This document shows positions 22,354-61,500 of a DNA stretch of 64,000 nucleotides, piece after piece. The notes below the pieces were generated by a model, which had not been told where the DNA came from, ran no database searches, and saw only the letters and a list, made by a program, of their open reading frames with translations. A program made the position numbers and the translations under genes. Each line of letters begins with the position of its first letter. The stretch's first letter is position 1. Source of the stretch: Macrostomum lignano (Eukaryota); the NCBI GenBank assembly GCA_002269645.1, contig NIVC01000928.1:248001-312000 (forward strand), written 5' to 3'.

Positions 22354-22561
22354 TCAATACGGCAGGCCCTGCGATTTAACGCTGAACATGTTGGGCCACT
22401 CGGAGCAGTCGGTCTCGCAGCCGGGCTTCAATAAATAGCCAATGCCGCACAGCAGGAGGAAGAATGCCTCAATAGGGAGGCTGAGCAGCATGCCGCGGTA
22501 CAGGGTGTTCAGTAGGCTGCCACGACGGCGACCGACTCCGCTAGAGGAAGCGACCCGCAAT
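22354..22561 (-). CDS. Terminal nesprin exon: basic patch, transmembrane helix and KASH-like luminal peptide
   Basis: RRRGSLLNTLYRGMLLSLPIEAFFLLLCGIGYLLKPGCETDCSEWPNMFSVKSQGLPY*. Acceptor ccgcag, phase 2, matching exon 23182-23306. Confidence 0.85.
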
Positions 22562-37500: not shown

Positions 37501-40500
37501 ATTCTCCCGTTTATTTCAGATCCCCGTTTTCCCCTTATTTCAGATCCCCATTCTCCCCTTATTTCATATCCTCATCATCCCCTTGTTTCAGATCCCCATT
37601 CTTCCCTTATTTCAGATCCCCATTCTTTCCCATTATGTCAGATCTGAATTCTCCCCTTACTTCCAATCCTCATTCTCCCCTTCAGATCCCCACCCTTCCC
37701 TTATTTCAGATCCTCATTCTCCCCTCGATCTCCTTGACCTTCAAAACTCACCCGAATCTCGGCCAGCCTGTCGGCCGCCCCGGCCACCCAGGCATCAAGC
37801 TGAGCCAGCCGGTCGTCCAGCTCAGCCCAGTCCTGAGCGAGGGTCTCCATCTGGTTAGTTCGCTGAGCAGCTGCCAGCTTCACTGCCCGAGCCACCTGGC
37901 CCAAGCGGGCGTGCTGAACGGAGTGCCGGGCCGCCTCGCGCGGGTCTAAGCGACGCCGAGCCTTGATGAAGGAGGTCGATAGTATCTTAGACATGTTTGG
38001 AATCCCTTGATTAGAATTCTTCAAACCAAAATCGCCCCTGATTAGAATCCTTCAAAATCGCCCCTGATTAGAATCCTTCAAAATCGCCCCTGATTAGAAT
38101 CCTTCAAACCGAAATCGCCTGATTAGAATCCTTCAAACCAAAATCGCCCCTGATTAGAATCCTTCAAAATCGCCCCTGATTAGAATCCTTCAAAATCGCC
38201 CCTGATTAGAATCCTTCAAACCAAAATCGCCCCTGATTAGATTCCTTCAAACCAAAATCGCCCCTGATTAGATTCCTTCAAACCAAAATCGCCCCTGATT
38301 AGATTCCTTCAAACCAAAATCGCCCCTGATTAGATTCCTTCAAACCAAAATCGCCCCTGATTAGATTCCTTCAAACCAAAATCGCCCGATTAGAATCCTT
38401 AAAAATCGCCCCTGATTAGAATCCTTCAAAATCGCCCCTGATTAGATTCCTTCAAACCAAAATCGCCCGATTAGAATCCTTAAAAATCGCCCCTGATTAG
38501 AATCCTTAAAAATCGCCCCTGATTAGAATCCTTAAAAATCGCCCCTGATTAGAATCCTTAAAAATCGCCCCTGATTAGAATCCTTCAAACCAAAATCGCC
38601 CGATTAGAATCCTTAAAAATCGCCCCTGATTAGAATCCTTCAAAATCGCCCCTGATTAGAATCCTTCAAACCAAAATCGCCCGATTAGAATCCTTAAAAA
38701 TCGCCCCTGATTAGAATCCTTCAAACCAAAATCGCCCGATTAGAATCCTTAAAAATCGCCCCTGATTAGAATCCTTCAAACCAAAATCGCCCCTGATTAG
38801 AATCCTTCAAACCAAAATCGCCCCTGATTAGAATCCTTCAAACCAAAATCGCCCCTGATTAGAATCCTTCAAACCAAAATTGTCCGATTAGAATCCTTCA
38901 AAATCGCCCTGAGTACTCTCGAAAGCAGTCAATGCCTGACATCTACCTGCTCAAGCGTTGCCTCGTGAGTCTCCAGGCCCTCAAAGAAGGCCCGATGCTG
39001 CTGCTGCTGCCGCCGAACGTCGGCCGAATCAGCGGCAGTCAGGGAAGCCTCGGCCAGCTTGGATTCGGCAGTCTCCAGGTACTCAGCCCAGCTGTGCAGC
39101 ATCTGCTCGTACTGAGCCTGGCTGGTCTGGATTCTGTGCAGCTCCTGGCGCCGCTCAGTCACCCGGACTCGAAGCTCCTCCCAGTCGATGCGCAGGCTCT
39201 GCAGCTCGCCAGATCTGTCCGCTTCGCTGAACTGCGGCGCCCGTTCCAGGATGCGGCCGCCTTTGCGAGTGAGCTCGGCCAGCTTGGCCTCGTACTGCCG
39301 GATGGTGGCCTCCAGCAGCTGCAGGTGTGTGGGATTTGAATGGGGGATTTTACTGGGGAAGTTGAGGCTATGTTAACGAGTCGATTTCGGCAGGTTAATT
39401 TGATAACTTGGAATTGGCAGTTGAAGCGCTGTTGGATGGTAGCTGAGTGGTATCTGAGAGGTAGTTGAGGGTAGCTGAGTAGTATCGGAGGGGTAGTTGA
39501 GTGGTAGTTGAAGGGTAGCTGAGGGGTAGTTGAGGAGTAGTTTAGTGGTAGTTGAAGGGTGCTGAAGGGTAGCTGAGAGATAGTTGAGGAGTAGTTAAGT
39601 GGTAGTTGAAGGGTAGCTGAGGGGTAGTTGAGGAGTAGTTTAGTGGTAGTTGAAGGGTAGCTGAGGGGTAGTTGAGGAGTAGTTTAGTGGTAGTTGAAGG
39701 GTAGCTGAAGGGTAGCTGAGAGATAGTTGAGGAGTAGTTAAGTGGTAGTTGAATGGTAGCTGAGGGGTAGTTGAAGAGTAGTTGAGTAGTAGTTGAATGG
39801 TAGCTGAGGGGTAGCTGAGTGCTAGTTTAGCAGGTATTTGAGAGGTAGCTGAGGAGAAGTTGAAGCATTAGCAAATATTACCGATGGAGGGTTTGGTGAC
39901 AGGCAATACCTAGCTATTTGAAAATACAAAACCGATCCAATCAAGTCGCTCACCTGACTGTCCCGCATCTGCTGCTCAACTGGAGCTGAGGAGTCTCTCG
40001 AAGCTTCGTACTGCCTCCGGCTGGCCTCCAGCTGCGCCCGAACCCGGGCGATCTCGTCTTTGAAGCCGCGCCACTCGCGCTGGCACTCGTTCAGTCGGGC
40101 CTGCCTCCGCTGGGCGCACTGCTCAAGCAGACTCAGCCTACCGTCCAGGTCCGCCACCGACTCCATGGCCAGGTCGGCCGCGCGTTCCCCGCCCGCCAGG
40201 CTGCCCACAACAGCCGGCGTGGCGTCGGACAGACGCTGGGATTGGTCGCAAATTCTTGACAGCTCTTCTAGTAGGATCTGCGAGAGTTTGAGAGTTTTTT
40301 GGGAGAATCGATTCGATTGGTCAGTAGCGGTCATTTGAGGACAACAGTTGGGTTAAAGTCGGTGACTTGTTGTTCAGGACCAATGTCAATGTCTTGGAAC
40401 ACGGGTGCTGAAAATACCATAGACTTAGGTCATCTGAGGACACAAGTGTTAAAAATACCACAGACTTAGGTCATCTGAGGACACGAGTGTTAAACATACC

Positions 40501-43500
40501 ATAGACTTAGGTCATCTGAGGACACAAGTGTTGAACATACCATAGACTTAGGTCATCTGAGGACACAAGTGTTTAAAATACCATAGACTTAGGTCATCTG
40601 AGGACACAAGTGTTAAAAATACCATAGACTTAGGTCATCTGAGGACACAAGTGTTAAAAATACCATAGACTTAGGTCATCTGAGGACACAAGTGTTAAAA
40701 ATACCATAGACTGGGGTCATCTGAGGAAACGAGTGTTAAAAATACCATAGACTGGGGTCATCTGAGGACGAGTGTTAAAAATACCATAGACTTAGGTCAT
40801 CTGAGGACACAAGTGTTAAAAATACCATAGACTGGGGTCATCTGAGGAAACGAGTGTTAATACCATAGACTGGGGTCATCTGAGGACGAGTGTTAAAAAT
40901 ACCATAGACTTAGGTCATCTAGCTGAGGACACAAGTGTTAAAAATACCATAGACTGGGGTCATCTAAGGACGAGTGTTAAAAATACCATAGACTGGGGTC
41001 ATCTGAGGACGAGTGTTAAAAATACCATAGACTGGGGTCATCTGAGGAAACGAGTGTTAATACCATAGACTGGGGTCATCTGAGGACGAGTGTTAAAAAT
41101 ACCATAGACTTAGGTCATCTAGCTGAGGACACAAGTGTTAAAAATACCATAGACTGGGGTCATCTGAGGACGAGTGTTAAAAATACCATAGACTGGGGTC
41201 ATCTGAGGACGAGTGTTAAAAATACCATAGACTGGGGTCATCTGAGGAAACGAGTGTTAAAAATACCAGACTGGAGTCATCTGAGGACGAGTGTTAAAAA
41301 TACCATAGACTGGGGTCATCTGAGGAAACGAGTGTTAAAAATACCAGACTGGAGTCATCTGAGGACGAGTGTTAAAAATACCATAGACTTAGGTCATCTA
41401 GCTGAGGACACAAGTGTTAAAAATACCATAGACTGGGGTCATCTGAGGAAAAGTGTTAATACCATAGACTGGGGTCATCTGAGGACGAGTGTTAAAAATA
41501 CCATAGACTTAGGTCATCTAGCTGAGGACACAAGTGTTAAAAATACCATAGACTGGGGTCATCTGAGGACGAGTGTTAAAAATACCATAGACTGGGGTCA
41601 TCTGAGGACGAGTGTTAAAAATACCATAGACTGGGGTCATCTGAGGACGAGTGTTAAAAATACCATAGACTGGGGTCATCTGAGGACGAGTGTTAAAAAT
41701 ACCATAGACTGGGGTCATCTGAGGAAACGAGTGTTAAAAATACCAGACTGGAGTCATCTGAGGACGAGTGTTAAAAATACCATAGAAGGGGGTCATCTGA
41801 GGATACGACACGAGTGCAGGTAAGAGCCTAGACTGAGGTCATCTGAGGACACGCGTGGACGTATACTGGAAGACGTTTAAGAATGAGAACGAGGCCATAC
41901 CAAAGTTCATTTGAGGACAAAGGGAGAACATACGCAGGCAGAATGGAGGTCATTTAAAAGCTTAATCGTGTCTTGAATACTCATTTCGTGAACAGCATGT
42001 ACAGAAGTTTGCAAAGTGAATTGTGAATAAATGTAGAGTATCGTATCGTAGCTCAAGCGAATTTTAAGCTCTCGGTTAGATGATACAAATATAACCTAGT
42101 TAATTTACCTGAAATCTGTATAAGAATTGAAATGATGACTGCAAGTTGTTGCAAAAATGAAACGCTTGATTAAATGCTCAATATGGTGGACATATTTCAA
42201 AGTTAAACAGTTAAATAAAAGACAATTACTCACATCTAAAGCGGGTCCACTCTCGGTTGAGTCAGTCTGGGAACGGAACAGACGCGATTCAACACCGTCC
42301 AGAGCTGATGAGACGGCAAGCAGAGCAGCCTGATAGCGGCGCTGCTGCTCTTGACGACCCTGTGATTGAATCTGTTGACTCTCGGTGGCTGACTGACGGC
42401 TCAGTCTAGTCATAGCTGCTGACAATTGCGATAGGGCGTTATTGAGCTCAAGGCTGGCTTTAGTTGGCGACTCTGATGGATCTACAGCTTGTAGAGACGC
42501 TGGCCGAGTCTGAAAAAAAACAAATAATAAATAATTGACAATGCTTTCATTACCGGACGAAATGCCTTTAAAAACGTCAAAATTCTGATGACAAGCAGAA
42601 CGAATCCGATTGCGCAAGACATTCAACTTTCAGGTTTCAGCGATGCATAAACAATAATCATATTCATTAGTAAGTTGTAAAGGGACATACATGCGATATA
42701 TAAAGACATTAAAAAACATACTAATATGCACTTTCAGCTTGATTTCCGCGCAATTCGTTGATGCTAAACCTAATTGTACATTGCTAAATTTAATCAAGTT
42801 TTTTACAATCAAAGCTCTACATTTGTACATTTGATTTAATTTTAACACTTCCTCCGACTAGATAAGGCAAGCCTCGATTATAAGGGGGGCCGTAGCTCAG
42901 CGGTAGCGCAGCTGCTCTGGTGTGCCAGCGACCCAGGCTCGATTCCAAGTGCAGTCACATTAATTTGGGGCTGAATTGGAATCTCGGCTTGGCTCTGCTC
43001 GTGCAATTAACGGCCTTGAGAGCCAACCCCCCAAGGCGCAGTGAAGTGTACATGCCTAACGATAATATAAAGTTAGGGCCGCTGTACACTCCTGTGTGAG
43101 TGTGTGCCTGCGTACGTATCCGCACGCTTGTATGCCTGCTCAGGGGAGTCGGCGGAATGGGCAGTAATGCCTCTCGCCGGTTGTGTGCCTATGTCGCTTA
43201 AAGTGCGCCAGGGTGCACACAACCCCCCTGCCTCTAATAAAAAAAAGCCTCGATTATATAGCGCCGGCCGGGGTGTGGGAGAAGATTGAAAAACAGGCAA
43301 TAAAATTCGCGACGGGGTGCCTGATCTTGTTTTTGTCTACTAGGGTTAGGCTAAGGTTGATCGATAGTTCAGCCGCGTCGTCTCTCTATCCCCCATTCCC
43401 CCTCCAATGTATGTACACCGAAGGCACTAGCCACAAATAGTGGAATGTACATTAAATATCAAACCACATCACACTGAATGTCACAGCAGCACAGCATAAT

Positions 43501-46500: not shown

Positions 46501-49500
46501 ACTGAATGTACAGAGAGGGTCCCCGGCTGAATGTACATATCACGGCTTAAGCGGGGCAGAGAGGATCCCCGACTGAATGTACAGAGAGGGTCCCCGGCTG
46601 AATGTACATATCACGGCTTAAGCGGGAGAGAGGATCCTCGACTGAATGTACAGAGAGGGTCCCTGGCTGAATATACCAGTACAGAGAGGGTCCCCGGCTG
46701 AATGTACACTTGTTAAAAGTTCAAGAAATGCAGGTAAAAATGCTGGAAGATGTTGAAAGTCAAAAAAGGTTCAGCAGGATAGTGGACTGGATTGAAAAAT
46801 TTATACACTCGTAGGAAAAGTAGGTTCACACTCCTCCAAGGCTCGTAAATGAGCTTAATAATAATACCGATAAAATATGTACGAAATAATTACCATAATA
46901 CTTGTCACAGGTTTTTATGGAATCCAAATGAAGATGGCGATGGCGAGATTTCAAATTAGAAAATCAAAAATTAGGAGTAATGAAGCGAAGAGGCGGAATA
47001 CTTCAAGTATGAATGAACGAATTAATTCTTAAATGCAAGGCGCTCTATAAAGAAAGCAGAACCCTCATTGATATTAATAAGCTTTATAGCAGTCATACAT
47101 CGTGAACATTGCAGCCTGCACAACAAGTGTACCAGAATCTGTGCTAAATTTACAAGTCAGGCTAATGGTGTGTTTATTCCAACTGCCGGAGAGAGACAGT
47201 TGAAATCGGTTGTGGCGCGTGCAGACAGCCACAAATTGTGGGTAGGATGTAGAGAGCGGTTGCCCCGAGGTTTTGCGCAGCTAGACGTGTAGAGTCAGTC
47301 GAATTCAGGCATCAACAGTAAACTAAGGACAGGAAGTGAGATATAGTTATGAATGGTCTGCGAGCCGGTATTGAACTCACCTTGCCGTGCATGCTGGTCA
47401 CCCGCTCATCGATCTGCTCCTCGGTTAGAGCTCTGGCCTCCTCAGCTGGCACAGCATCGATTGTGGTGCTGCTGGCGGCCATTTCGGACGACCTCTCAGC
47501 TGTAGCTGACGAGTCTGACCTGACGGGCCGGTCCTGCGTATTCCAGAACACAACAACCTCGCCGTCGGCAAGAGACTGCGTAGCGCCTTGCAGGCTGTAG
47601 GTCTCGCCCTCGCCAAGGTACATCGCGTCGCCAGCTCGAAGCAGTCGCGACCGGAAGTTCACAGTGACAACGGTCTCCCGGTCGAGCGGAACCGCCATGG
47701 CCCGACGACACCGATGGAAGTCCAGCGGCACCAGCAGCCTCGGCTGTTGGCCAGTCGGTCTGGCAGACTGCTCGGCGCTGTTCACGAAGCTGACCCGATC
47801 GGCCGGCTGCAGGCGCACCGGCTCGCCTGGCTGCACAGTCACTGGCAATTCGTTCACTAGCACAGTCTCGTACGGGTCCACCCACACAACTTGCTGCCTC
47901 TGCTGCTCGGCCAGCGAGTACACGCAGATGACCTGATCGGCCGGGCTGTAGCACAGGCTGGACCCAACTTTGGCCTCCTGCATCGGCCCGATCAGGTGCA
48001 GCTCATTGGCGACTACCGGAGTCGCTTCTCCGTCGCGCACGATCGGAGTTTCGGCGTCCACACGACACCAGGATCGGCGAAGACGGCTCCAGCTGCTGGC
48101 GGCCCCGGGCCTCGTCGCTGCCACTGCGGTCGCGGCGCAGGAAGCGAATCTCGTTTGGCCTGGCCGAGGGCTGCCGTTCGCCGTCCAGCTGGATGGAGTC
48201 TCCGGGTTTCAGCATCGAGAGTGTCGCCGAATCATCGTCAGGCGGTTGATCGTTGATGAGCACTGCTTGGCGATCGGGATTGACGGTCAGGATCGAGACA
48301 GTCTCGTGGCTGATGCTGAGGGCATCGTCGGGCGTGCAGAATCTCTGGGCCCGGGTGGCGCGGGTGCAGCAGAAGACTGCGACGGCTGAGGCGGCGGCGG
48401 CATCGCTTCGAGACGATGGAACGCAGCGTCGAGTTCGTTGGCGCCGCGGCTGGAGACAGCGAGATGCGGTCTGACCGGCTCCTCGTCTGGTGCCGCTGGC
48501 GACTGCTACGGTGGTTTTTTTAAAGATGAGAGACGGATTTTAAAACAAATTCCACAGCTTCCGGCTTTGAATATAAGCACATTGGGTTTGCTCAAGCACA
48601 GAGGTTCGCCTTCTGCTTCTGGTCTTTAACCTACTCGTACTGCTCGCTGGGTTGGTCTGAAACTATTCGCTTCTACCTCTGTCTGTCTCTCTCTCTCTAT
48701 GCGCACAGTCGGGGGCATTTATTAATTCTTGGCTTATTTATTGTTCATTCTCAAATTCGTCTGCATTATTGTCCGCAGCTCCTAACGAAAAACCCATGCA
48801 GTTTTAATTTATTCTACTACTCGACCGCATCTTCATTCAGTCGGTTTGAAGTAAAAAAAGCTGCTATTTGAGTCAAGGCGTGTCTCACGTTCTATTTGCA
48901 GTGATGAGGTGGTGGCGGTCTGCTGGACAGAGACGCACACGAGCCTTTAGAGAAATAGAACACCCCAGGGTGTGCAGTTTGCGCACTATGTCGGCACCGA
49001 ATACAGAGTACAATAAACAACAGATCTTACATCAATTAGAAATTCCATACAGACTACCGAACTAAGTAGTAAGTAAAGAAGATAAAGCTCGTAGTTACCT
49101 GAGCGGCGCTGCGAGCCTCTAGCTGGGCCAGTTCGGCAGCCAGTCTCTCGTACTCGGGGTCCGACTCGGACAAGCCGCCAGTTGTTCGCAGCGTCTCCAA
49201 TTCGTAGCGCAGAGTTTTCACGTTGCGCGCGAGTTCGAGCGACTCACGCTCGGCGGCTGCTGCGGCCACGCCTGCCCGGCTGGAGGCGCCGCTGCCGCGA
49301 CCGCGGCCGGCCTTCAACGCCGCGAGATCGTCGACGTCGGCCGCTGGGTACTGGGACTTTTTAGGAGACTCGCTAGCACTTCCTGCTGATACTGACTCGG
49401 ACTCTGATGCCTCCTTAGCTGGCGACCCTTCCACACTTCTTACTGGAGAGGCCTCGAAACTCTGAGATTCTTTCGTAGGCGACGCGTCCGCGCTAGTAAG

Positions 49501-52500
49501 TGCCCTCGGTGGCGAAGCTTCGGCACTGACAAAGCTTGTGGCGGGTGAAGCTTCGAAACTTGGCGGCGCATCTCCTGTTTGTTGCGCTTCGATTGTTAAA
49601 GCGTCTCTGATCGGCGCTGCTTCAGCACTCGGTACCTCTCTTGTCGGCGATGCTTCAGCACTCGGTACCTCTCTTGTCGGCGATGCTTCAGCACTCGGTA
49701 CCTCTCTTGTCGGTGACACTTCAGCACTCAGTACCTCTCTTGTCGGTGACACTTCAGCACTCAGTACCTCTCTTGTCGGCGATGCTTCAGCACTCGGTAC
49801 CTCTCTTGTCGGCGATGCTTCAGCACTCAGTACCTCTCTTGTCGGTGACACTTCAGCACTCAGTACCTCTCTTGTCGGCGATGCTTCAGCACTCGGTACC
49901 TCTCTTGTCGGCGATGCTTCAGCACTCGGTACCTCTCTTGTCGGCGATGCTTCAGCACTCAGTACCTCTCTTGTCGGCGATGCTTCAGCACTCGGTAACT
50001 CTCTTATCGGCGATGCTTCAGCACTCGGTACCTCTCTTGTCGGCGATGCTTTAGCACTCAGTACCTCTCTTGTCGGCGATGCTTCAGCACTCGGTACCTC
50101 TCTTGTCGGCGATGCTTCAGCACTCGGTACCTCTCTTGTCGGCGATGCTTCAGCACTCAGTACCTCTCTTGTCGGCGATGCTTCAGCACTCGGTAACTCT
50201 CTTATCGGCGATGCTTCAGCACTCGGTACCTCTCTTGTCGGCGATGCTTCAGCACTCAGTACCTCTCTTGTCGGCGATGCTTCAGCACTCGGTACCTCTC
50301 TTGTCGGCGATGCTTCAGCACTCGGTACCTCTCTTGTCGGCGATGCTTCAGCACTCAGTACCTCTCTTGTCGGTGACACTTCAGCACTCGGTACCTCTCT
50401 TGTCGGCGATGCTTCAGCACTCAGTACCTCTCTTGTCGGTGACACTTCAGCACTCGGTACCTCTCTTGTCGGCGATGCTTCAGCACTCAGTACCTCTCTT
50501 GTCGGCGATGCTTCAGCACTCGGTACCTCTCTTGTCGGCGATGCTTCAGCACTCAGTACCTCTCTTGTCGGCGATGCTTCAGCACTCAGTACCTCTCTTG
50601 TCGGCGATGCTTCAGCACTCGGTACCTCTTTTTTCGGTGATGCTTCAGCACTCGGTACCTCTCTTGTCGGTGATATTTCAGCACTCAGTACCTCTCTTGT
50701 CAAAGAAACATCAGCACTCGGTACCTCTCTTGTCAAAGAAACATCAGCACTCGGTACCTCTCTTGTCGGCGATGCTTCAGCACTCAGTACCTCTCTTGTC
50801 GGTGACACTTCAGCACTCAGTACCTCTCTTGTCGGTGACACTTCAGCACTCAGTACCTCTCTTGTCGGTGACACTTCAGCACTCAGTACCTCTCTTGTCG
50901 GCGATGCTTCAGCACTCGGTACCTCTCTTGTCGGTGACACTTCAGCACTCAGTACCTCTCTTGTCGGTGATGCTTCAGCACTCGGTACCTCTCTTGTCGG
51001 CGATGCTTCAGCACTCGGTACCTCTCTTGTCAAAGAAACATCAGCACTCGGTACCTCTCTTGTCGGCGATGCTTCAGCACTCAGTACCTCTCTTGTCGGC
51101 GATGCTTCAGCACTCAGTACCTCTCTTGTCGGTGACACTTCAGCACTCGGTACCTCTCTTGTCGGCGATGCTTCAGCACTCGGTACCTCTCTTGTCGGTG
51201 ACACTTCAGCACTCAGTACCTCTCTTGTCGGTGATGCTTCAGCACTCGGTACCTCTCTTGTCGGCGATGCTTCAGCACTCGGTACCTCTCTTGTCAAAGA
51301 AACATCAGCACTCGGTACCTCTCTTGTCGGCGATGCTTCAGCACTCAGTACCTCTCTTGTCGGCGATGCTTCAGCACTCGGTACCTCTCTTGTCGGCGAT
51401 GCTTCAGCACTCAGTACCTCTCTTGTCGGCGATGCTTCAGCACTCAGTACCTCTCTTGTCGGTGACACTTCAGCACTCAGTACCTCTCTTGTCGGCGATG
51501 CTTCAGCACTCAGTACCTCTCTTGTCGGCGATGCTTCAGCACTCAGTACCTCTCTTGTCGGCGATGCTTCAGCACTCGGTACCTCTCTTGTCGGTGACAC
51601 TTCAGCACTCAGTACCTCTCTTGTCGGCGATGCTTCAGCACTCGGTACCTCTCTTGTCGGTGACACTTCAGCACTCAGTACCTCTCTTGTCGGTGATGCT
51701 TCAGCACTCGGTACCTCTCTTGTCGGCGATGCTTCAGCACTCGGTACCTCTCTTGTCAAAGAAACATCAGCACTCGGTACCTCTCTTGTCGGCGATGCTT
51801 CAGCACTCAGTACCTCTCTTGTCGGCGATGCTTCAGCACTCGGTACCTCTCTTGTCGGCGATGCTTCAGCACTCGGTACCTCTCTTGTCGGCGATGCTTC
51901 AGCACTCGGTACCTCTCTTGTCGGCGATGCTTCAGCACTCAGTACCTCTCTTGTCGGCGATGCTTCAGCACTCGGTAACTCTCTTATCGGCGATGCTTCA
52001 GCACTCGGTACCTCTCTTGTCGGCGATGCTTCAGCACTCAGTACCTCTCTTGTCGGCGATGCTTCAGCACTCGGTACCTCTCTTGTCGGCGATGCTTCAG
52101 CACTCAGTACCTCTCTTGTCGGCGATGCTTCAGCACTCGGTACCTCTCTTGGCGGTGACACTTCAGCAGTCGGTACCTCTCTTGTCGGTGACACTTCAGC
52201 ACTCGGTACCTCTCTTCTCGGTGATGCTTCAACACTCGGTACCTCTCTTGTCGGCGATGCTTCAGCACTCAGTACCTCTCTTGTCGGCGATGCTTCAGCA
52301 CTCGGTACCTCTCTTGGCGGTGACACTTCAGCAGTCGGTACCTCTCTTGGCGGTGACACTTCAGCAGTCGGTACCTCTCTTGTCGGTGACACTTCAGCAC
52401 TCGGTACCTCTCTTCTCGGTGATGCTTCAACACTCGGTACATCTCTTGTCAAAGAAACATCAGCACTCGGTACTTCTCTTGCTGGTGATGCTTCAGCACT

Positions 52501-55500
52501 CGGTACCTCTCTTGTCGGTGATGCCTCAGCACTCGGAACACTTCTGGCTGGAGAAGCTTCAGCACTCGGTACATCTTTTGAAGGCGAGGCTTCAGCACTC
52601 GGTACATCTCTTGAAGGCGATGCTTCAGCTGTAAAAGTAGATGCAGCTGATAAAAACTCTCCACTGGAAGCCGATTTGCTTCGTGCTGTTGAGGCTTCAA
52701 AACTAGTAGCATCCTTGATTTGCGAATATCTAGCGGTTGTCACTTCATCACTGGGGCCGCTCGTCGCTGGTGACGCTTCAGCATATGGGCCTTCCACTGT
52801 AGGCTCACTCGCAGCTGCTGAAAACTCAACACTTGCAACGCTTTTAGCTGGTGAAGATTCGACACTGCGTATGTCTCCAGCAGATGGCGCTTCGGTGCGT
52901 GGATTATCACCAGTTGTCGAGGCTTCAGCTGTTGGAACTGACCTCTTCAGCGACAGTTCAATGCTTGAAGACGCTTCACCAATATCGCCTGTGGCGCTGG
53001 GCAGACTTCTGACTGGAGACCCTTCAACACTTTTGGCTGGAGAGGTGTCAACACTATGGACGGGTGACGTCTCAAAACTGGGTACAGGTCGACTACTGAA
53101 CTCTTCGGTCACAACCTCATCAGCAGGTCTCACCTCAGCACTGCTTGAACTGTCGGCTGGCGCTTGCTGCTCACCGATACTGCCTTGTGCAAGCAAGCGC
53201 TTTGCTGCCGCTCTTCTTGCCAGAAGTTCGTCAGCGCTAGGAAAAGTGGACATGGAATGCAAAGAGGCATCCTTTGACGGTGACGATTCAGCACTTTGAA
53301 CTGGAGATGCTTCGGCACTCTGAACTGGAAGAGCTTCAGCTTTCTTTGACGGTGACGATTCAGCACTTTGAACTGGAGATGCTTCGGCGCTCTGAACTGG
53401 AGATGCTTCGGCACTATGAGCTGGAAGAGCTTCAGCTTTCTTTGACGGTGACGATTCAGCACTCTGAGCTGGAGATGCCTCAGGACGTTGTAATGAAAAA
53501 GCATCTGTATCCTGCATTTTCCCGAAAGTCTCCGCGCTTTTTAGCTGAGAATCTTTGGCCAAGAAATTAGAAGTTGAACTTTCAATGCTTTCAGTAAAAA
53601 CAGTTGTAGTTGTCTGAATTCTTGTTTTGGTTTGCTGCATAGTGTTCTTTTCAGCACTCGGAGCACTTCTGGCTGGAGACGCTTCTGCTTCGGCACTTGG
53701 GACACTTCTGGCTGGAGACGCTTCAGTGCTCTGTCCCTCTTCAAATACTACTGCTTCAGCACTCGGAACACTTCTGGCTGGAGACGCTTCAGTGCTCTGT
53801 CCCTCTTCAATGACTACTGCTTCAGCACTCGGAACACTTCTGGCTGGAGACGCTTCAGTGCTCTGTCCCTCTTCAATGACTACTGCTTCAGCACTCGGAA
53901 CACTTCTGGCTGGAGACGCTTCAGTGCTCTGTCCCTCTTCAATGACTACTGCTTCAGCACTCGGAACACTTCTGGCTGGAGACGCTTCAGCACTCGGAAC
54001 ACTTCTGGCTGGAGACGCTTCAGCACTCGGAACACTTCTGGCTGGAGACGCTTCAGTGCTCTGTCCCTCTTCAATGACCACTGCTTCAGCACTCGGAACA
54101 CTTCTGGCTGGAGGCGCTTCAACACTCGGAACACTTCTGGCTGGAGATGCTTCAGCACTCGGAACACTTCTGGCTGGAGACGCTTCAGTGCTCTGTCCCT
54201 CTTCAATGACCACTGCTTCAGCACTCGGGACACTTCTGGCTGGAGACGCTTCAGCACTCGGAACACTTCTGGCTGGAGATGCTTCAGCACTCGGAACACT
54301 TCTGGCTGGAGACGCTTCAGCACTCGGAACACTTCTGGCTGGAGACGCTTCAGTGCTCTGTCCCTCTTCAATGACCACTGCTTCAGCACTCGGAACACTT
54401 CTGGCTGGAGGCGCTTCAACACTCGGAACACTTCTGGCTGGAGATGCTTCAGTGCTCTGTCCCTCTTCAATGACCACTGCTTCAGCACTCGGAACACTTC
54501 TGGCTGGAGGCGCTTCAACACTCGGAACACTTCTGGCTCGAGACGCTTCAGCACTCGGAACACTTCTGGCTGGAGACGCTTCAGCACTCGGAACACTTCT
54601 GGCTGGAGATGCTTCAGTGCTCTGTCCCTCTTCAATGACCACTGCTTCAGCACTCGGAACACTTCTGGCTGGAGGCGCTTCAGCACTCGGAACACTTCTG
54701 GCTGGAGACGCCTCAGCACTCGGAACACTTCTGGCTGGAGACGCGCTGGGAGCACTTGGGCCGGCCTCCGAGCTCAGGGCCTGGGGCCTTTGCTTGGCAG
54801 TAGCAGCAGTCTCAGAAACTTCATAGGGCAACTCTTCAAGACTGGGCAGTCGTTTCTTAGAGCGAGGCGAGCCGTCGCTTTCTTGGGAAGCAGCAGAGTG
54901 CGGTCTAGCTGGGTGAACTCGGACAGTCTGCGCCTCCTCAACCAGCACTGTCGGTTTCACCGAGCGAGTCGGCGATCCAGACGACGGTTGCGGCGGTCGA
55001 AGGTCGGCGGCATCAAACCGAGAGGACGCAACCACCGGAGACGTTCTCTGACGCACTGAAATTGCTGATGGCGTCGTCCTCGGACTCGACGGCGAGAACT
55101 GGCGCGGCGTCTTACGAGGACTCTTGGGACTCTCGCGACGCCGTTCCAGAGTGAGCCGGACCTCGATGTTGGGCGGCTCGTCCAAACTGTCATCGCCAGC
55201 ACCGAGGCCGAGCTGCGGCGTTTCAATCGTCAGCTGGGGCTTCCGCCTGATGGCGGCGATCTCATCCTGCTGCGGCTCCTCTGGGGCGTTCGCGATGGCC
55301 GCTGCTGACTCCACCTCGGTCTCCAGGTCGGCCAGCTGGGACTCCAATCGGCCAAGTCGATCTCGCAGTTCGGCGGGCACCGAGCCGCCGCTGCCCCGGC
55401 CGGCCGGATAGCGAACGCTGACCTCCTCCACGATCTCCGTGACGCGACGGCGTTGAACCAGAACCTCCTGGCGGGCCAGCGCGCATCGAGCGGCTAGCGC

Positions 55501-58500
55501 CTCGGTTGGCGCGGCGTCAACGCCCGAAGCGGCCGCGCGCGCCTGGCCGAGGCCGAAGCGCTCATCCGGAGCCCGGCGCCGAGGCTGTCCAACCGGGCTG
55601 TCAGGTCCTGACGGTACTCCAGCTCCGAGTCGACGGCAGCCTCCGATTGATTGAGCCGATCCTGGGCTCTTGATGATGATGGAAGAATGAAATGGAATAT
55701 GTATTGCGGCAATAACAAAATTTTCTATGACGTGACTAACCGTGGCTAACTTGGCTTAACTTTCAGCGCCTGAAACAAATGTGAAACCCCAGTCTAGTAG
55801 CGATTATTAATGACGAATAAATTCTTACTCGGAAAATCGCTGCTCAACATCTGTAGCGCTGCGGTCAGCCTCCAGCATCGCGGCCGCGTCCGAACTCGAC
55901 TGGACAAACTGCCGGCTCTGGTCGCGAAATTCGGACAGCCGGTGCTCGGCGGCTCGGAGCTGCTTCTTGGAATTCTAAGAATGCCGAAAGAGCGATAGGG
56001 GTGTTGAACTTGAGACCATATTACTGCTTGTTAATTAGTGCAAATGCACGTAAATACTTTGAAGTTTGAAACTGCATAGCAACTGAGATCCTGGGAGGCT
56101 GACCCAGCAACTGAGGATCTTCTGGGAGGTTGGCCCAGCAACTGAGGATCTGGGAGGCTGGCCCAGCAACTGAGGATCTGGGAGGCTGGCCCTGCAACTG
56201 AGGATCTGGGAGGCTGGCCCAGCAACTGAGGATCTGGGAGGCTGGCCCAGCAACTGAGGATCTGGAAGGCTGGCCCAGCAACTGAGGATCTTCTGGGAGG
56301 TTGGCCCAGGAACTGAGGATCTTGGAGGGTGGCGGTGGCCCAGTAACTGAGGAACTGGGAGGTTGTCATGTGGTCAAGTGATCATAACACTGAAAAATGC
56401 AAGCAAGTGCGCAGCGAAGTGCATGAGTGCATTGAAAGTACATTACAGGTGTAAGTGCATTCTACACAACACCCCAATGAAACGGCAACTCTGCATAAGG
56501 GTGGCAAGGTAAGCAAAGGTGGAACTTCCTGCCTAAAAGCAAAGGAACACTCTCTTTCCCTCACAGCATGGATCGTGCAAAGCTACCAGCAAAATAGCAA
56601 AGCATAAGTGCAATGAATCAAAAGTCGTTAGTTACTAAGGCTAAGATAAAAATTTGAAAATTTATACAAGACCAAAACTTACCTCGATACTTATTTCTTC
56701 GCTAATAGCATAGGTTGACTAGAAAAGGTTAGCAAAACAAAGCAAGTTAGGTGTTTGTTATATAGCTACAAAACTCATTTTAGCGTGTTTAAAACTACTT
56801 ATTAGATGACGAGGCTAAACATGTTCTAGTTTTACTCGCCGTTTATCCAAACTGTTAATTGTAACGTTAAACTAATTAGAGTTAATTTAAACAAAAGTCA
56901 AACAAACGGACCTGAACTCTCCTGGCCCGCTCCTGAAGCTCCTGGCTGGACAGGCGCCCCAGGTCAGCCCCAGAGTCGCCGCCGGCCCCCGTAGCCGCCG
57001 AAGTCGCGGCTTCGATGGTTTCGTCCAGCGAATGTCGCCGATTGCGCAGGTCGCCGAGGCCGCCAGCCTCGCGGTGAAGCTGAGCGCGCTGGCGAACAAC
57101 GGCCGACTGCAGATCGGCGAACCGGCTGAGCAGCTCCTCGGCCTGCTCGGAGACCCGCCGGCGGCTGGACAGGCCGCAGTGCCGCTGCAGCGAGTCGCCG
57201 GCCACCCGCAGATTATCCAGGCTGGCCTTCAGCGACTCGGTCTCGCGCAGCAGCGACTCAACGGAGTCGTCGTACGAGGCTGAGACCGAAGCGGAAGCGG
57301 AGGCTGTATCGCGCCATCTGCGCTCCGTCACCTCGAGGGTCTCCGTGACGCTGCGAACCACTCGCTGAAATTGTTGGGAGAAACAGAAGGAGATGAGAAG
57401 TGAATGGGGCTTCTCGGATGAAGCTTTGCGGCTGACGGAGATGGGAGGCTGGCCCAGCAGGCCAGCAACTGAGGATCTGGGAGGCTGGCCTAGCAACTGG
57501 GGATCTGAGAGGTTGGCCCAGCAACTGGGGATCTGAGAGGCTGGCCCAGCAACTGAGGATCTGGGAGGCTGGTGGCTCAGCAACTGGGGATCTGGGAGGC
57601 TGGCCCAGCAACTGGGGATCTGGGAGGCTGGCCCAGCAACTGGGGATCTGGGAGGCTGGCCCAGCAACTGGGGATCTGGGAGGCTGGCCCAGCAACTGGG
57701 GATCTGGGAGGCTGGCCCAGCAACTGAGGATCTGGGAGGCTGGCCCAGCAACTGGGGATCTGGGAGGCTGGCCCAGCAACTGGGGATCTAGGAGGCTGGC
57801 TCAGCAACTGGGGATCTGGGAGGCTGGCCCAGCAACTGGGGATCTGGGAGGCTGGCCCAGCAACTGGGGATCTGGGAGGCTGGCCCAGCAACTGGGGATC
57901 TGGGAGGTTGGCCCAGAAACTGGGGATCTGAGAGGTTCGCCCAGCAACTGGGGATCTGAGAAGTTGGCCCAGAAACTGGGGATCTGGGAGGTTCGCCGAG
58001 CAACTGGGGATCTGGGAGGCTGGCCCAGCAACTGAGGATCTGGGAGGCTGGTGGCTCAGCAACTGGGGATCTGGGAGGCTGGCTCAGCAACTTAGGATCT
58101 GGGAGGCTGGCTCAGCAACTTAGGATCTGGGAGGCTGGCCCAGCAACTGGGGATCTGGGAGGCTGGCTCAGCAACTGGGGATCTGGGAGGCTGGCCCAGC
58201 AACTGGGGATCTGGGAGGCTGGCCCAGCAACTGGGGATCTGGGAGGCTGGCCCAGCAATTGGGATCTGGGAGGCTGGCCCAGCAACTGGGGATCTGATAG
58301 GTTCGCCCAGCAACTGGGGATCTGAGAAGTTGGCCCAGAAACTGGGGATCTGGGAGGTTCGCCGAGCAACTGGGGATCTGGGAGGCTGGCCCAGCAACTG
58401 AGAATCTGGGAGGCTGGCTCAGCAACTGGGGATCTGGGAGGCTGGCTCAGCAACTTAGGATCTGGGAGGCTGGCTCAGCAACTTAGGATCTGGGAGGCTG

Positions 58501-61500
58501 GCTCAGCAACTGGGGATCTGGGAGGCTGGCCAAGCAACTGGGGATCTGGGAGGCTGGCTCAGCAACTGAGGATCTGGGAGGCTGGCCCAGCAACTGAAAC
58601 TCTGGGAGGCTGGTGGCTCATCAACTGGGGATCTGGGAGGCTGGCCCAGCAACTGAAACTCTGGGAGGCTGGCCCAGCAACTGAAACTCTGGGAGGCTGG
58701 TGGCTCATCAACTGGGGATCTGGGAGGCTGGCCCAGCAACTGAAACTCTGGGAGGCTGGTGGCTCATCAACTGGGGATCTGGGAGGCTGGCCTATCTGCA
58801 GAGTGAGCAGGGAGCAAACAAGGAGGCTACCGGAGAGTCTGTCTGCACTTTCACTGCATTCAAAGGCATTCAAATTGGAACGAAAAATGTGTGAAAGCTG
58901 AGTGGCACCGCCAACCCCCCCCCCCTTCCTTAAGAGCCGCTCCAGCAGAGCGACTGCGAGAGATATTGACAGAAAGACGCAAATGACAAAGGAAACTCCA
59001 GGCAGCCAGGTGTAACTATAAAATATCCTTATCGACTTGAAGTTGTTAACCATGGCAACGGCACGCAATAGATCTTGTAATAAAGGAACTCACGGGGAGT
59101 TGCTACACTAAATTGCTTTACCTGGCAAACGATCCTTCTTCTTTTACACGGGCCTCGTTGCTGCTGCTGTTGCTCTTTCTGCTGCTGTTTGCGCTGCTGC
59201 TGATCATAGCTGGGTCCCAGCTGCGCCGCATGGCAACTAATCAGCTAACTAATTCGAACACCTGGCCTATCTAATTATCTACCTGGGAGAGTTATCTCCA
59301 GAATTGACAATGTAGCAATTTCTTCTGCCGGTGGCGCGGCTGCCGCAGCATCAGCAGCAGCAGCGGCAGGTGTTGCAGAATCTGCATTACCAAAGCCGCC
59401 GCATCAGCTCGGGACTCAATCGAGGCATTGGCAGACAGCCAGCAGGCTGAGAACAACAACAAGAAACACTTCTTTCCGAAAACTGTTGTTCTACTCTATC
59501 CTGCACTGGTTCTTCTGCTTTTGCTTCTCACGCAACTTGTGGCAGAGAAAAAATAATAAAACTCTTTTTCCTAAGTCTGCTTCTTTTAGTCTCTACATGT
59601 TAATAGTCTGCTGCTCTTGCAGATTTTCTTCTTTGTATACTCCACAGCAGCAGGCGGGGAGGGGTTGCGCGCGCTGAGCCTGAGCGGTCTGGGAGGTTGG
59701 GGCGGCTGCTCCGATCTCTCCTCTCTGTGCCTACCCGCGCCTCTCGCCTCGCCCAGAGCAAACACAGAGCCCTCAGCCCCACAACCAGCTGCATTGCAGT
59801 GCAGTGCAGAGGCCCTCGCCAATCTCTCTCTCCCTCTCCCTATCCCCTCCTGTCCGCTTCCCTCCCAGGGCTTGTCCTGCAGTTCCTCCCTGCCGCCCCC
59901 CCTCACCGTTACGGCGTACTTGGCAAGCTGGGAGATTTCTGTGGGCTGAAGGGGAACTGAGGATACAGGGCGAAGCCAGGCGAGTCGTGGCGCATGCGTG
60001 GGAGTGCGCGATGGGGATTCTGGATCCCCTACAGACCCCAACTCTCTTCCCTCCCTCCCTCTTTCTCTCCCCCCTTTCTTAGATGACGCTGACTGGCCGT
60101 CAGTGAGTCACGCGGAGGTAAGGAAGTCGAAAAGCAGAATTAAATCTGGGCCCAGCAAAAAAACAGCTGGCAAAATCGAGATTTCTAGTCACAGATGTTG
60201 CGTAATAAAAAGCGCATGTGCTATTTAACTGACTCGGACTGCCGCTGTCTTCTTCTGTCGATTAGCCACGACAGAAGGATTTAAAACTTTCTGCTTTAAA
60301 AAAGTTGGTATTTCTATCATCATCATTCTTACTAAATTAGGCGTAAAAAAGATGTCCCACCCTAATCTGGATACTTTTAGTGGTAGATAAAGGGCAGGAT
60401 TTTTTTTACAGTTGCACGACAATCCCCACTGGCGCAAAACAGCTCTGGACTTACGCTGAATTTCTCCTGCTCCTCAGTGACCAGCCGCTGCTCCTCAATC
60501 AGCCTCCGCCCAGTCGACATCAGCTCGTTGGCTCTCAGTTTCGCATCCTCAATCTGTCGTTGCATTTCAGCCAGACCCTCCGGCCCCAGACCGTCCTTGA
60601 TGTTCTCGGCCAGAGCGGCCATGGTGTCCAGTCGGCTTCTGGCGACAGTCGCAGCCTCCGGGCCGAATATTCTACTCAGCCGAGTTGCCAGGCTGTCCAG
60701 CTCCATCAGGTCGAATCCTTCGGTGTCCAGCCTCCTGGCTAGCGGCTTCGCCTCGCCTATCCAGGACTCCAGCTCTGCTTTGGCGGACTCCAGCTGGTGC
60801 CGGTGCTGCAGCTCATCGCCGAGCACCTCCAGCCGGTCGGCAGCCGCCGCGGCGAGGTCGGCGCGGGCTTCGCGAACTGCTGCGCTGGATGGCGACGCCG
60901 TTGAGACGTCCTCGGCCGACGCTTTCTGCTCCTGCGGTGCGGGAGGGGCGGCGGCGGCATCAGCTGGTGACTCAGCGGACTCCTGCTGCTGTGACAGCAG
61001 CTGCTGGATGATGTAGGGAACCAGCAGCATGGGATAACTGAGGGCCTCAGACTCAGACAGCAGATATGAGACAGGGCCCAGCCCGCAACCCCAGCACACA
61101 AAAGCAATGAAAGAGCTTTTATCATAGCGATTCCTCTGAAGTCCCCCCGTGTAGACCTCCAGCTGTCTCCTCCCCTCTCCCTCATCTCCCTCTCCCTCGC
61201 CATCAAAAGCAGCCAAGCAATAACTCTGGTATACAGCCTCAGGTGCACAGCGCAGGTGCTTCTAAGCGTACTTTTGTCCTCGCCCGCTGCCTTCTCTCCA
61301 TCTCTCCCCGCTTCCTTTCCCTTAGATTATTCATCCCACCCCACTGTTTCTCCCATTCTTTTACCTCCCAGGCTCCACAGACCGGGAGCTCAGGGACTGC
61401 AGGTGCAGCGGCAACCAATCAGAGCCATGCAGTCTGGCTGCACCCTGGGTTGCCGGCAGGGGACTTTTGCTTCGGCAACAAAAGGAAATGAGTTACACTG

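What the first reader, a model, noticed from the sequence alone, without database searches (positions are those of the whole stretch)
49099..55668. Nesprin carries a 6.57-kb single exon with ~120 11-aa repeats, most containing a CDK-type S-P-x-R site (candidate phospho-tunable spring)
Seen: between spectrin-repeat exons lies a ~2,190-codon exon with two homogenised 33-bp arrays (SAEASPARSVP ~33 units, SAEASPTREVP ~90 units). An 8-aa array (AEASPVQS) and older degenerate copies lie between them. Even the variant unit SAEAVVIEEGQ keeps the 11-aa period. Known: S/T-P-x-K/R is the consensus for CDK1/CDK5, and KSP repeats of neurofilament-H and PEVK of titin act as phosphorylation- or charge-tuned disordered spacers. 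Inference: this is a long disordered, multiply phosphorylatable segment in the nucleus-cytoskeleton (LINC) tether whose length or stiffness could be switched by cell-cycle or neuronal kinases. I do not recall this repeat in characterised nesprins.
Basis: partly seen in the sequence, partly recalled or inferred. Interest (0 to 1): 0.85.

Follow-up and report, generated by a model that had tools for sequence, protein, structure and literature searches.

The report
Giant serine-proline repeat exon in flatworm nesprin
A Macrostomum lignano nesprin-1-like gene really does contain one 6.6-kb exon encoding about 2,000 residues of short Ser-Pro repeats, predicted to be disordered. The repeat number differs between two gene copies, and a phosphorylation-tuned spring role is plausible but untested.

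Summary
The window is Macrostomum lignano DNA. On the minus strand, 55668..49099 is one exon of 6,570 nt. It holds 33 units of SAEASPARSVP type, a short 8-aa array, older degenerate copies and 92 units of SAEASPTREVP type, with 117 S-P-x-K/R sites.

Only this frame is stop-free through the 742 non-array codons. An RNA-seq-derived GenBank model of a second gene copy splices into the exon and reads into the first array in this frame.

That second copy has a 7,744-nt intact exon, with 94 versus 92 units and about 70 versus 9 8-aa units. All length differences are whole units. These are therefore fast-evolving in-frame coding minisatellites.

The gene is nesprin-1-like. Its closest relatives are annotated nesprin-1/2 proteins with Pfam KASH domains, and Spectrin_SYNE1 scores 76.7 bits. 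Its own tail is only KASH-like and lacks PPPX.

AlphaFold gives coil at pLDDT about 40 for the repeats and confident helices for the exon's end.

As written, the window lacks one G at about 55566, which breaks the frame. This is probably a consensus error.

Phospho-regulation, spring function and linkage to the KASH end in one mRNA are not shown. Lineage-specific repeats in giant nesprins are already known (ANC-1, Msp300-PE).

The parts
49099..55668 (-). The single large exon (6,570 nt; 6,571 nt if the missing G at about 55566 is restored). It encodes about 2,190 residues.
   Evidence: Splice sites were read directly. The frame is open. Models P0001-P0004 and P0193 cover both of its ends.
55190..55668 (-). 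Helical, spectrin-like start of the exon (AQDRLNQSEAAVDSELEYRQDL... to ...LESQLADLETEVES).
   Evidence: Translation and the P0001/P0193 sequences.
55566..55567 (-). Site of a one-base (G) deficit relative to other copies. As written, it puts the long ORF out of frame with the canonical splice phase.
   Evidence: tblastn breakpoint at 55566. The paralogue exon is 1+3x2581 nt and open.
54858..55143 (-). Non-repeat basic S/T-P cluster (RRRESPKSPRKTPRQFSPSSPRTTP ... GSPTRSVKP ... GSPRSKKR).
53665..54753 (-). Array A: 33 units of 33 nt (SAEASPARSVP, with SAEAVVIEEGQ and APPAR variants) arranged in higher-order repeats.
53488..53664 (-). Unique linker of 59 aa, rich in T, Q and S.
53269..53487 (-). 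8-aa array (AEASPVQS / AESSPSKK / AEALPAQS), about 9 units here and about 70 units in the paralogue.
52633..53268 (-). Middle segment with old degenerate copies (FETSPVHSVDTSPAKSVEGSPVRS...).
   Evidence: The Ser-Pro dipeptide is kept through synonymous codon changes.
49597..52632 (-). Array B: 92 units of 33 nt (SAEASPTREVP/L), with 85 S-P-x-R/K sites.
49309..49596 (-). Degenerate repeat copies after array B (FEASPATS, AEASPPRA, ADASPTKE, FEASPVRS, VEGSPAKE, SESPKKS).
49099..49308 (-). Helical end of the exon (ERESLELARNVKTLRYELETLR...AELAQLEARSAAQ).
   Evidence: AlphaFold gives pLDDT 85-95 and helices for this stretch.
55828..55974 (-). Upstream exon ending in phase 2 (..RFS-GA|GTAAGA). Coordinates are approximate.
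56912..57376 (-). Next upstream helical, spectrin-like exon. Coordinates are approximate.
47378..48505 (-). Downstream non-spectrin exon. The window lacks a C at about 48356 and a CG at about 48108 relative to the paralogue.
22354..22561 (-). Terminal exon: basic stretch, transmembrane helix and a 24-aa tail ending GLPY plus the stop codon. The end is KASH-like.

Best explanation
The exon is a genuine coding exon of a Macrostomum lignano nesprin-1-like giant spectrin-repeat gene. Between two helical ends it encodes about 1,900 residues of Ser/Ala/Glu/Pro-rich short tandem repeats. All repeat families share an [S]AE[AS]SP core, in 8-aa and 11-aa forms.

The arrays are in-frame coding minisatellites. 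They grow and shrink by whole units through unequal exchange, so the two gene copies in this genome have different lengths. The reading frame and the Ser-Pro core are kept throughout.

The product is most likely a long, flexible, net-acidic, unstructured linker with a contour length of about 0.7-0.9 micrometres, inserted into the rod about 3,100 residues before the membrane anchor.

The rest is inferred, not shown. The linker probably works as an extensible spacer. Its 117-141 S-P-x-K/R sites, many with a Ser four residues upstream, could let proline-directed kinases add two negative charges per phosphorylated serine, up to four per unit if the upstream Ser is also modified. That would expand or stiffen the linker.
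For: Coding status:
- Only one of six frames is stop-free across 742 non-array codons.
- There are no indels in 2.1 kb of unique exon sequence between the two copies. A neighbouring intron has 8 indel events in 0.9 kb.
- Every length difference is a multiple of 24 or 33 nt, and the paralogue exon is an intact 2,581-codon ORF in the canonical splice phase.
- Degenerate old copies keep Ser-Pro with varying codons (TCA/TCT/TCG, CCA/CCC/CCG/CCT) and mostly keep a basic residue at +3.

Transcription:
- The GenBank annotation of Mlig_3_7 is derived from RNA-seq and transcriptome assemblies (PMC5730564).
- Its model PAA83972.1 runs from the upstream exons through this acceptor into array A in this frame.
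- Small models lie inside array B on the same strand and in the same frame.

Disorder:
- In one AlphaFold run the repeats have pLDDT about 40 and no secondary structure, while the last 60 residues of the exon are helical at pLDDT 85-95.
- The region is 12-13% Pro and 1% aromatic.

Nesprin identity.
Against: - No phosphorylation, expression level or protein data were available.
- The charge-hydropathy plot is borderline.
- Array B is so homogeneous (20 distinct units) that its open frame and its motif could simply be copied from one founder unit.
- Differences between the copies within array B are mostly swaps between existing unit variants, so they say little about selection.
- Only 8 synonymous and 8 non-synonymous changes separate the unique segments, which gives a weak estimate of constraint.
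- The transcript models are fragmentary. They do not show the whole arrays in mature mRNA, nor linkage to the KASH end.
- The window copy as written carries three frame-breaking small deletions.
Confidence: 0.6

Rival explanations
1. The arrays are a neutral by-product. They are ordinary minisatellite expansions of a genome unusually prone to them, which happened to land in frame in a giant rod protein that tolerates insertions. The S-P-x-R motif is abundant only because one founder unit was copied.
For: - About 30 other minisatellites lie in the same 64 kb, and 15% of the genome is simple or tandem repeats (PMC5730564).
- Array B has only 20 distinct units.
- Copy numbers differ strongly between the two gene copies.
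- Unrelated short arrays occur in the nesprins of other animals.
Against: - Diverged old copies outside the homogenised arrays still keep Ser-Pro, and mostly a basic residue at +3, through synonymous changes.
- All three independently expanded families keep the AE[AS]SP core.
- No frame-breaking indel occurs in 7.7 kb of the paralogue exon.
Confidence: 0.3
2. The arrays are not part of the mature mRNA. They are removed as introns, or only the unique segments are exonic.
For: - An open frame through a minisatellite is not proof of an exon here. ORF 33207-33914 runs into a 21-bp array that the RNA-based model splices out.
- The annotation has no continuous model across the arrays.
Against: - PAA83972.1 reads into array A with no splice.
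- Models inside array B use the same strand and frame.
- The unique linkers between the arrays are open in the same frame as the arrays and both flanks.
Confidence: 0.08
3. The copy in this window is a recently disabled duplicate. The missing G at about 55566, C at about 48356 and CG at about 48108 are real frameshifts.
For: - There are three frame-breaking deletions relative to the paralogue and the UniProt models.
- P0002 appears to derive from a sequence with the same G deficit.
- The DV1 genome has 180 Mb of duplicated blocks.
Against: - The surrounding 2.2 kb, including an intron, is 100% identical to the intact copy.
- All three sites lie in short G/C runs, which is typical of long-read consensus errors.
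- More than 2,100 codons downstream remain open.
Confidence: 0.12
4. The repeats act as a multivalent docking platform rather than a spring. About 120 identical phospho-Ser-Pro or Thr motifs would recruit a reader such as a WW, Cks, 14-3-3 or FHA-type module, or would concentrate a kinase or phosphatase at the nuclear surface.
For: - The density and regular spacing of identical motifs.
- UniProt auto-names the models containing the next exon 'FHA domain-containing'.
Against: - Pfam finds no FHA domain in that exon.
- The structure model is uninformative, with pLDDT 35.
- No binding partner is known.
Confidence: 0.08

Closest known systems
C. elegans ANC-1 (nesprin-1/2 orthologue), six 903-residue tandem repeats
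   Same: It is a giant KASH protein whose central region is a lineage-specific tandem array nearly identical at the nucleotide level. The repeats are needed for function as a long cytoplasmic region (PMC8139857).
   Different: ANC-1 units are 903 aa and predicted to be helical and spectrin-like. Here the units are 8-11 aa, proline-rich and predicted to be unstructured.
Drosophila Msp300-PE tandem repeats (about 20 x 108 aa and 19 x 101 aa) with a KASH-like tail
   Same: It is a nesprin isoform with two lineage-restricted, net-negative repeat families and a C-terminal transmembrane helix plus a short non-canonical luminal tail (PMC11230431).
   Different: The Msp300-PE units are about 100 aa and predicted to form beta structures. 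No S-P-x-K/R periodicity has been reported for them.
Neurofilament-H/M KSP repeat tails
   Same: They contain tens of short Ser-Pro repeats in a disordered, charged tail. Multisite proline-directed phosphorylation alters brush extension (PMC11626179 and PMC11151108, listed; the mechanism is from general knowledge).
   Different: The KSP repeats form a side-arm of an intermediate filament, not an insert in a spectrin rod. They number about 40-50 sites rather than 117-141, and there is no sequence relationship.
Titin PEVK segment
   Same: It is a long unstructured P/E/V/K-rich repeat region inserted in a giant modular protein. It acts as an entropic spring and is modulated by phosphorylation (general knowledge).
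   Different: PEVK is encoded by many small exons, each roughly one repeat, and its length is set by splicing. Here a single exon is involved and its length is set by genomic copy number.
Short-period arrays in RefSeq nesprins of Microcaecilia unicolor (XP_030070635.1), Brienomyrus brachyistius (XP_048840963.1) and Lampetra fluviatilis (XP_078720624.1)
   Same: These are lineage-specific arrays of 5-21-aa units embedded in nesprin rods.
   Different: They are much shorter (180-540 aa) and have no S-P-x-K/R sites. They are predicted models and, as far as I know, have not been described.

Membership tests
Nesprin / giant KASH protein (SYNE1/2, ANC-1, Msp300) | Many spectrin repeats, including the nesprin-type repeats | tested here: met
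   On an approximate spliced product of the downstream exons, Pfam Spectrin scores 81.2 bits. Spectrin_SYNE1 scores 76.7 bits against a cut-off of 35, in 6 stretches. Single exons also hit Spectrin.
Nesprin / giant KASH protein (SYNE1/2, ANC-1, Msp300) | Closest relatives are nesprins | tested here: met
   phmmer against 1.84 billion representatives gave top non-Macrostomum hits at E 5e-106 to 1e-50. Those looked up are annotated nesprin-1-like, nesprin-1 or SYNE2 in Lingula, Branchiostoma, Tubulanus, mammals and fish. Three that were scanned carry Pfam KASH.
Nesprin / giant KASH protein (SYNE1/2, ANC-1, Msp300) | C-terminal KASH domain: a transmembrane helix plus a luminal peptide of about 30 aa ending in PPPX | tested here: inconclusive
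   The terminal exon has a transmembrane helix and a 24-aa tail. An HMM built from the tails of 54 hits picks it as the best of 950 window ORFs (E 1.3e-4, 18 bits). Only model positions 5-38 match, which cover the juxtamembrane region, the helix and the E-x-D-x-S motif. Pfam KASH does not hit even at E<=10, and the tail ends GLPY rather than PPPX. UniProt names P0005 'KASH domain-containing'.
Nesprin / giant KASH protein (SYNE1/2, ANC-1, Msp300) | N-terminal paired calponin-homology (actin-binding) domains in the giant isoform | not testable with these tools
   The 5' end of the gene lies beyond the window. P0002 extends upstream but shows no CH domain.
Nesprin / giant KASH protein (SYNE1/2, ANC-1, Msp300) | Outer-nuclear-membrane localisation and SUN binding | not testable with these tools
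   This needs an experiment.
CDK-type multisite substrate | Minimal consensus [S/T]-P-x-[K/R] | tested here: met
   There are 117 sites in the window exon and 141 in the paralogue.
CDK-type multisite substrate | Actual phosphorylation by a proline-directed kinase | not testable with these tools
   No phosphoproteome data were available.
Coding minisatellite (VNTR-type array) | Head-to-tail units of high identity, with whole-unit length differences between copies | tested here: met
   TRF finds 91.7 copies at 91% matches and 0% indels. Higher-order unit patterns are present. The paralogue differs by +33 and +33 nt in array B, by about 61 extra 24-nt units, and by about 11 fewer units in array A.
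Intrinsically disordered spacer (NF-H KSP / titin PEVK type) | Lack of stable secondary or tertiary structure | tested here: inconclusive
   The AlphaFold single-sequence model gives pLDDT about 40 and no secondary structure for residues 1-282. The adjacent exon end is helical at 85-95. The charge-hydropathy plot is borderline. This is prediction only.
FHA domain (next exon, 48505-47378) | Match to the FHA profile or fold | tested here: not met
   Pfam gives no FHA hit on P0004 at E<=1. The structure model has pLDDT 35 and cannot be used for fold search. The name comes only from UniProt's automatic annotation.

The most novel reading that the evidence does not exclude
The flatworm nesprin contains a genetically length-variable linker of about 0.7-0.9 micrometres. 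Its charge, and therefore its extension, would be set by cell-cycle or neuronal proline-directed kinases acting on more than 100 identical sites. That would make the nucleus-cytoskeleton tether a phosphorylation-controlled spring. Copy-number differences between the duplicated genes would give tethers of different length.
Probability: 0.15. Interest if true: 0.75.

Novelty: new variant of a known kind. Interest (0 to 1): 0.45.

Why it matters
Giant nesprins set nuclear position and cytoplasmic mechanics, yet why they are so long, and what their non-spectrin inserts do, is unclear.

This locus offers a natural experiment in a transgenic and RNAi-tractable flatworm. It has an unusually long unstructured insert made of one simple motif. 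Two gene copies carry different unit numbers. The exon also yields a single diagnostic tryptic peptide that makes phosphorylation easy to test.

Together with ANC-1, Msp300-PE and the vertebrate arrays noticed here, it suggests that nesprin rods repeatedly acquire lineage-specific tandem inserts. Length or charge, rather than sequence, may be what is selected.

It is also a practical warning. Older assemblies and annotations break this gene at the arrays.

Tried and rejected
- Searching the whole exon and a 121-aa piece of array B against 5.8 billion proteins returned only four M. lignano flank-matching models and nothing. Even known M. lignano array fragments were not returned. These searches are therefore insensitive to this low-complexity sequence and say nothing about other species.
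- A C-terminal query containing poly-Ala returned nothing.
- Exact look-ups of P0001 and P0004 found no contig.
- Pfam KASH did not hit the terminal exon, and the PDB sequence search returned only chance hits.
- Pfam FHA did not hit the next exon, and its AlphaFold model was too poor for fold search.
- The Uversky charge-hydropathy test was borderline.
- dN/dS within array B was abandoned. The differences are swaps between existing unit variants, not new mutations.
- I first read the frame changes in exon 48505-47378 as mini-introns. Comparison with L001 showed that they are 1-2-bp deficits in the window.


Full report
**Source and gene.** Protein searches identify the window as Macrostomum lignano. 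The flanks of the exon are 98-99% identical to UniProt models A0A1I8.... The gene lies on the minus strand and fills most of the window.

**The observation.**
- The acceptor AG is at 55670-55669, preceded by a pyrimidine-rich stretch. The donor GT is at 49098-49097. These bound an exon of 6,570 nt.
- The frame that starts at 55668 has no stop in 2,190 codons.
- Tandem Repeats Finder reports a 33-bp array of 91.7 copies (91% matches, no indels) at 49604-52629. It also reports 24/72/96-bp arrays at 53272-53483 and 33/66/165/264-bp arrays at 53650-54744.
- Parsed as protein, array A has 33 eleven-residue units. Most are SAEASPARSVP, nine are of SAEAVVIEEGQ type and four are APPAR.
- Array B has 92 units but only 20 distinct DNA sequences. 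The commonest are SAEASPTREVP (28 copies) and SAEASPTREVL (22 copies), and the edge units are more diverged.
- There are 117 S-P-x-[KR] sites, 89 of them exactly 11 residues apart, and 115 S-x-x-x-S-P arrangements.

**Is it coding?**
- An open frame inside a 33-bp array means little. Three of the six frames of array A, and two of array B, have no stop.
- In this same gene, an exon frame runs on into a 21-bp intronic array that the RNA-based model removes.
- The stronger evidence comes from the 742 non-array codons: the N-flank, the linker, the middle segment and the C-flank. Only the proposed frame is stop-free in all of them.
- The degenerate repeat copies in these unique segments keep the Ser-Pro dipeptide while its codons vary. 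Eight of eleven keep Lys or Arg at +3. This points to constraint at the protein level that predates the recent expansions.

**A second copy.**
- The cluster of a C-terminal hit contained GenBank protein PAA83965.1. The cluster of P0001 contained PAA83972.1.
- Both lie on contig NIVC01000393.1 of assembly GCA_002269645.1 (Mlig_3_7). I fetched them as L001 and L002.
- This locus is a diverged duplicate of the window. Its introns are 88-97% identical with many indels.
- Its homologous exon is 7,744 nt, which is 1 + 3 x 2,581. It is open throughout in the phase dictated by the upstream donor.
- Compared with the window it has:
  - 94 rather than 92 array-B units, from two 33-nt insertions;
  - about 22 rather than 33 array-A units;
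  - about 70 rather than 9 eight-residue units of AESSPSKK, AEALPAQS and AEASP[AV]QS type.
- All length changes are whole units.
- The unique exon segments show no indels and 16 substitutions in 2,112 nt, 8 synonymous and 8 non-synonymous.
- These are therefore dynamic, in-frame coding minisatellites.

**Transcription.**
- The Mlig_3_7 GenBank annotation was built only from RNA-seq and transcriptome assemblies with TransDecoder ORFs (PMC5730564).
- PAA83972.1 runs from the upstream exons through this acceptor (...RFSE|AQDRLNQ...) and several units into array A, in the proposed frame.
- Five small models lie inside array B on the same strand and in the same frame.
- This is good evidence that the exon is transcribed and spliced at its 5' end.
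- It does not prove that the full arrays are in mature mRNA, or that the exon is linked to the 3' end of the gene. The annotation divides the locus into several 'genes' (g5 to g11). This may reflect internal trans-splice sites or simply assembly breaks in the repeats.

**Frame problems in the window.**
- The upstream exon ends in phase 2, so the canonical junction reads EAQDRLNQSEAAVDSELEYRQDLTARLDSLGAGLR.
- In the window this frame stops at about 55497. In P0001, P0193 and L002 an extra G (CTCCGGGATGAG) carries it into the long ORF.
- The next exon (48505-47378) likewise lacks a C at about 48356 and a CG at about 48108. The surrounding 2.2 kb, intron included, is 100% identical to L001, where that exon is a clean 376-codon ORF.
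- I read these as consensus errors in short G/C runs. A recently disabled duplicate cannot be excluded.

**What gene is it?**
- An approximate spliced product of the downstream exons scores 81 bits on Pfam Spectrin. It scores 76.7 bits on Spectrin_SYNE1 against a cut-off of 35.
- A full HMMER search of 1.84 billion representative proteins with the C-terminal 1,088 residues gave 401 hits.
- The top non-Macrostomum hits I looked up are annotated nesprin-1-like, nesprin-1 or SYNE2 in a brachiopod, amphioxus, a nemertean, mammals and fish. Two unnamed mollusc proteins and one annelid protein were also among them.
- Fifty-four hits end in the canonical KASH sequence, and three that I scanned have Pfam KASH.
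- The M. lignano gene ends, in both copies and in PAA83965.1, with a basic stretch, a transmembrane helix and the 24-residue tail KPGCETDCSEWPNMFSVKSQGLPY.
- A profile built from the 54 KASH tails ranks this ORF first among 950 window ORFs (E 1.3e-4). Only the helix and the first luminal residues align, there is no PPPX, and Pfam KASH does not hit.
- The gene is therefore nesprin-1-like with a KASH-like but non-canonical end, reminiscent of Msp300-PE (PMC11230431).

**Structure and likely role.**
- In one AlphaFold run, fifteen array-B units plus the degenerate copies were coil at pLDDT about 40. The last 60 residues of the exon were helices at pLDDT 85-95.
- The repeat region is 12-13% proline, 1% aromatic and net acidic. 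There are 307 D+E against 179 K+R in the window core.
- A simple charge-hydropathy test is borderline.
- The best reading is a flexible acidic linker of about 1,950-2,340 residues, with a contour length of about 0.74-0.89 micrometres. It sits in the rod about 3,100 residues before the membrane anchor.
- Each 11-residue unit carries one CDK-type site and a Ser at -4, which is a GSK3-type priming geometry. Full phosphorylation would change the unit charge from -1 to -3 or -5.
- That this happens, and that it tunes extension, is inference by analogy with NF-H KSP tails and titin PEVK.

**Comparison with what is known.**
- ANC-1 has six 903-residue repeats that are nearly identical at the DNA level (PMC8139857).
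- Msp300-PE has about 20 x 108-aa and 19 x 101-aa acidic repeats that are restricted to Drosophila (PMC11230431).
- Among the nesprins retrieved here, I noticed a 54 x 10-aa array in a caecilian nesprin-2, a 17 x 21-aa array in a mormyrid nesprin-2 and a 35 x 5-aa array in a lamprey nesprin-1-like protein.
- None of the retrieved proteins of at least 600 aa exceeds 7 [ST]-P-x-[KR] sites per 500 residues. Array B of the flatworm exon has about 42.
- Lineage-specific tandem inserts in nesprins are therefore a known kind. This one is a new and extreme variant: very short units, unstructured, with a kinase-consensus core, and length-variable between duplicated genes.

**Verdict.**
Gene identity, the coding exon, motif density and probable disorder hold up.
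- The phospho-tunable spring remains an untested hypothesis.
- The main rival is neutral minisatellite expansion in a genome that is 15% tandem repeats.

Noticed in passing
window 1-64000 (for example 11-1076, 1602-5651, 6004-7410, 28055-29097, 40411-41808, 57462-58792): About 30 separate minisatellite or microsatellite arrays with periods of 4-123 bp fill the introns and intergenic DNA. About a third of the periods I tallied by eye are divisible by 3, whereas all three arrays inside the big exon are.
   Followed up: partly
window 32987-33914 (-): An exon's reading frame continues without a stop into a 21-bp minisatellite (GEGEGME-type translation). The RNA-based model PAA83965.1 splices that array out. 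This shows that open frames through arrays are not proof of coding in this genome.
   Followed up: yes
window about 55566, 48356 and 48108: The window lacks G, C and CG respectively, relative to the duplicate locus (L001/L002) and the UniProt models. Each deficit breaks the reading frame, while the surrounding sequence is identical. These are probably assembly consensus errors.
   Followed up: yes
window 47378-48505 (-); L001 4205-5332: This exon encodes 376 aa that are non-spectrin and predicted to be strand-rich, directly after the repeat exon. UniProt auto-names the models 'FHA domain-containing', but Pfam finds no FHA domain and AlphaFold gives pLDDT 35.
   Followed up: partly
window 22354-22561 (-): The terminal exon encodes a KASH-like tail anchor: a transmembrane helix plus 24 residues ending GLPY. 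It lacks the PPPX motif that binds SUN domains in canonical nesprins.
   Followed up: yes
proteins P0021, P0047 and P0058: Nesprin-2 of Microcaecilia unicolor (about 54 x ETRTDGIPRV), nesprin-2 of Brienomyrus brachyistius (about 17 x 21 aa) and nesprin-1-like of Lampetra fluviatilis (about 35 x TQHVD) each carry their own short-period tandem arrays inside the rod.
   Followed up: partly
window 20010-20351 (-) and about 9000-12000 (-); L001 30592-31670 and 33485-39141: Two further genes lie downstream on the same strand. One encodes a WSC-domain protein (Pfam 64 bits) and the other a multi-EF-hand, calbindin-like protein.
   Followed up: partly
L001/L002 (contig NIVC01000393.1): The Mlig_3_7 annotation divides this one nesprin locus into several gene models (Mlig001789.g5 to g11). 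One is a 2,395-aa KASH-end model that starts at an internal Met. This suggests either shorter trans-spliced isoforms or breaks caused by the repeats.
   Followed up: no
window 49099-52643 versus L001 1-3612, and 47378-49098: The C-flank, the next intron and the next exon are 100% identical between the two gene copies, apart from the small deletions at about 48356 and 48108 noted above. Other introns are 3-12% diverged. This suggests recent gene conversion between the duplicates over this stretch.
   Followed up: partly
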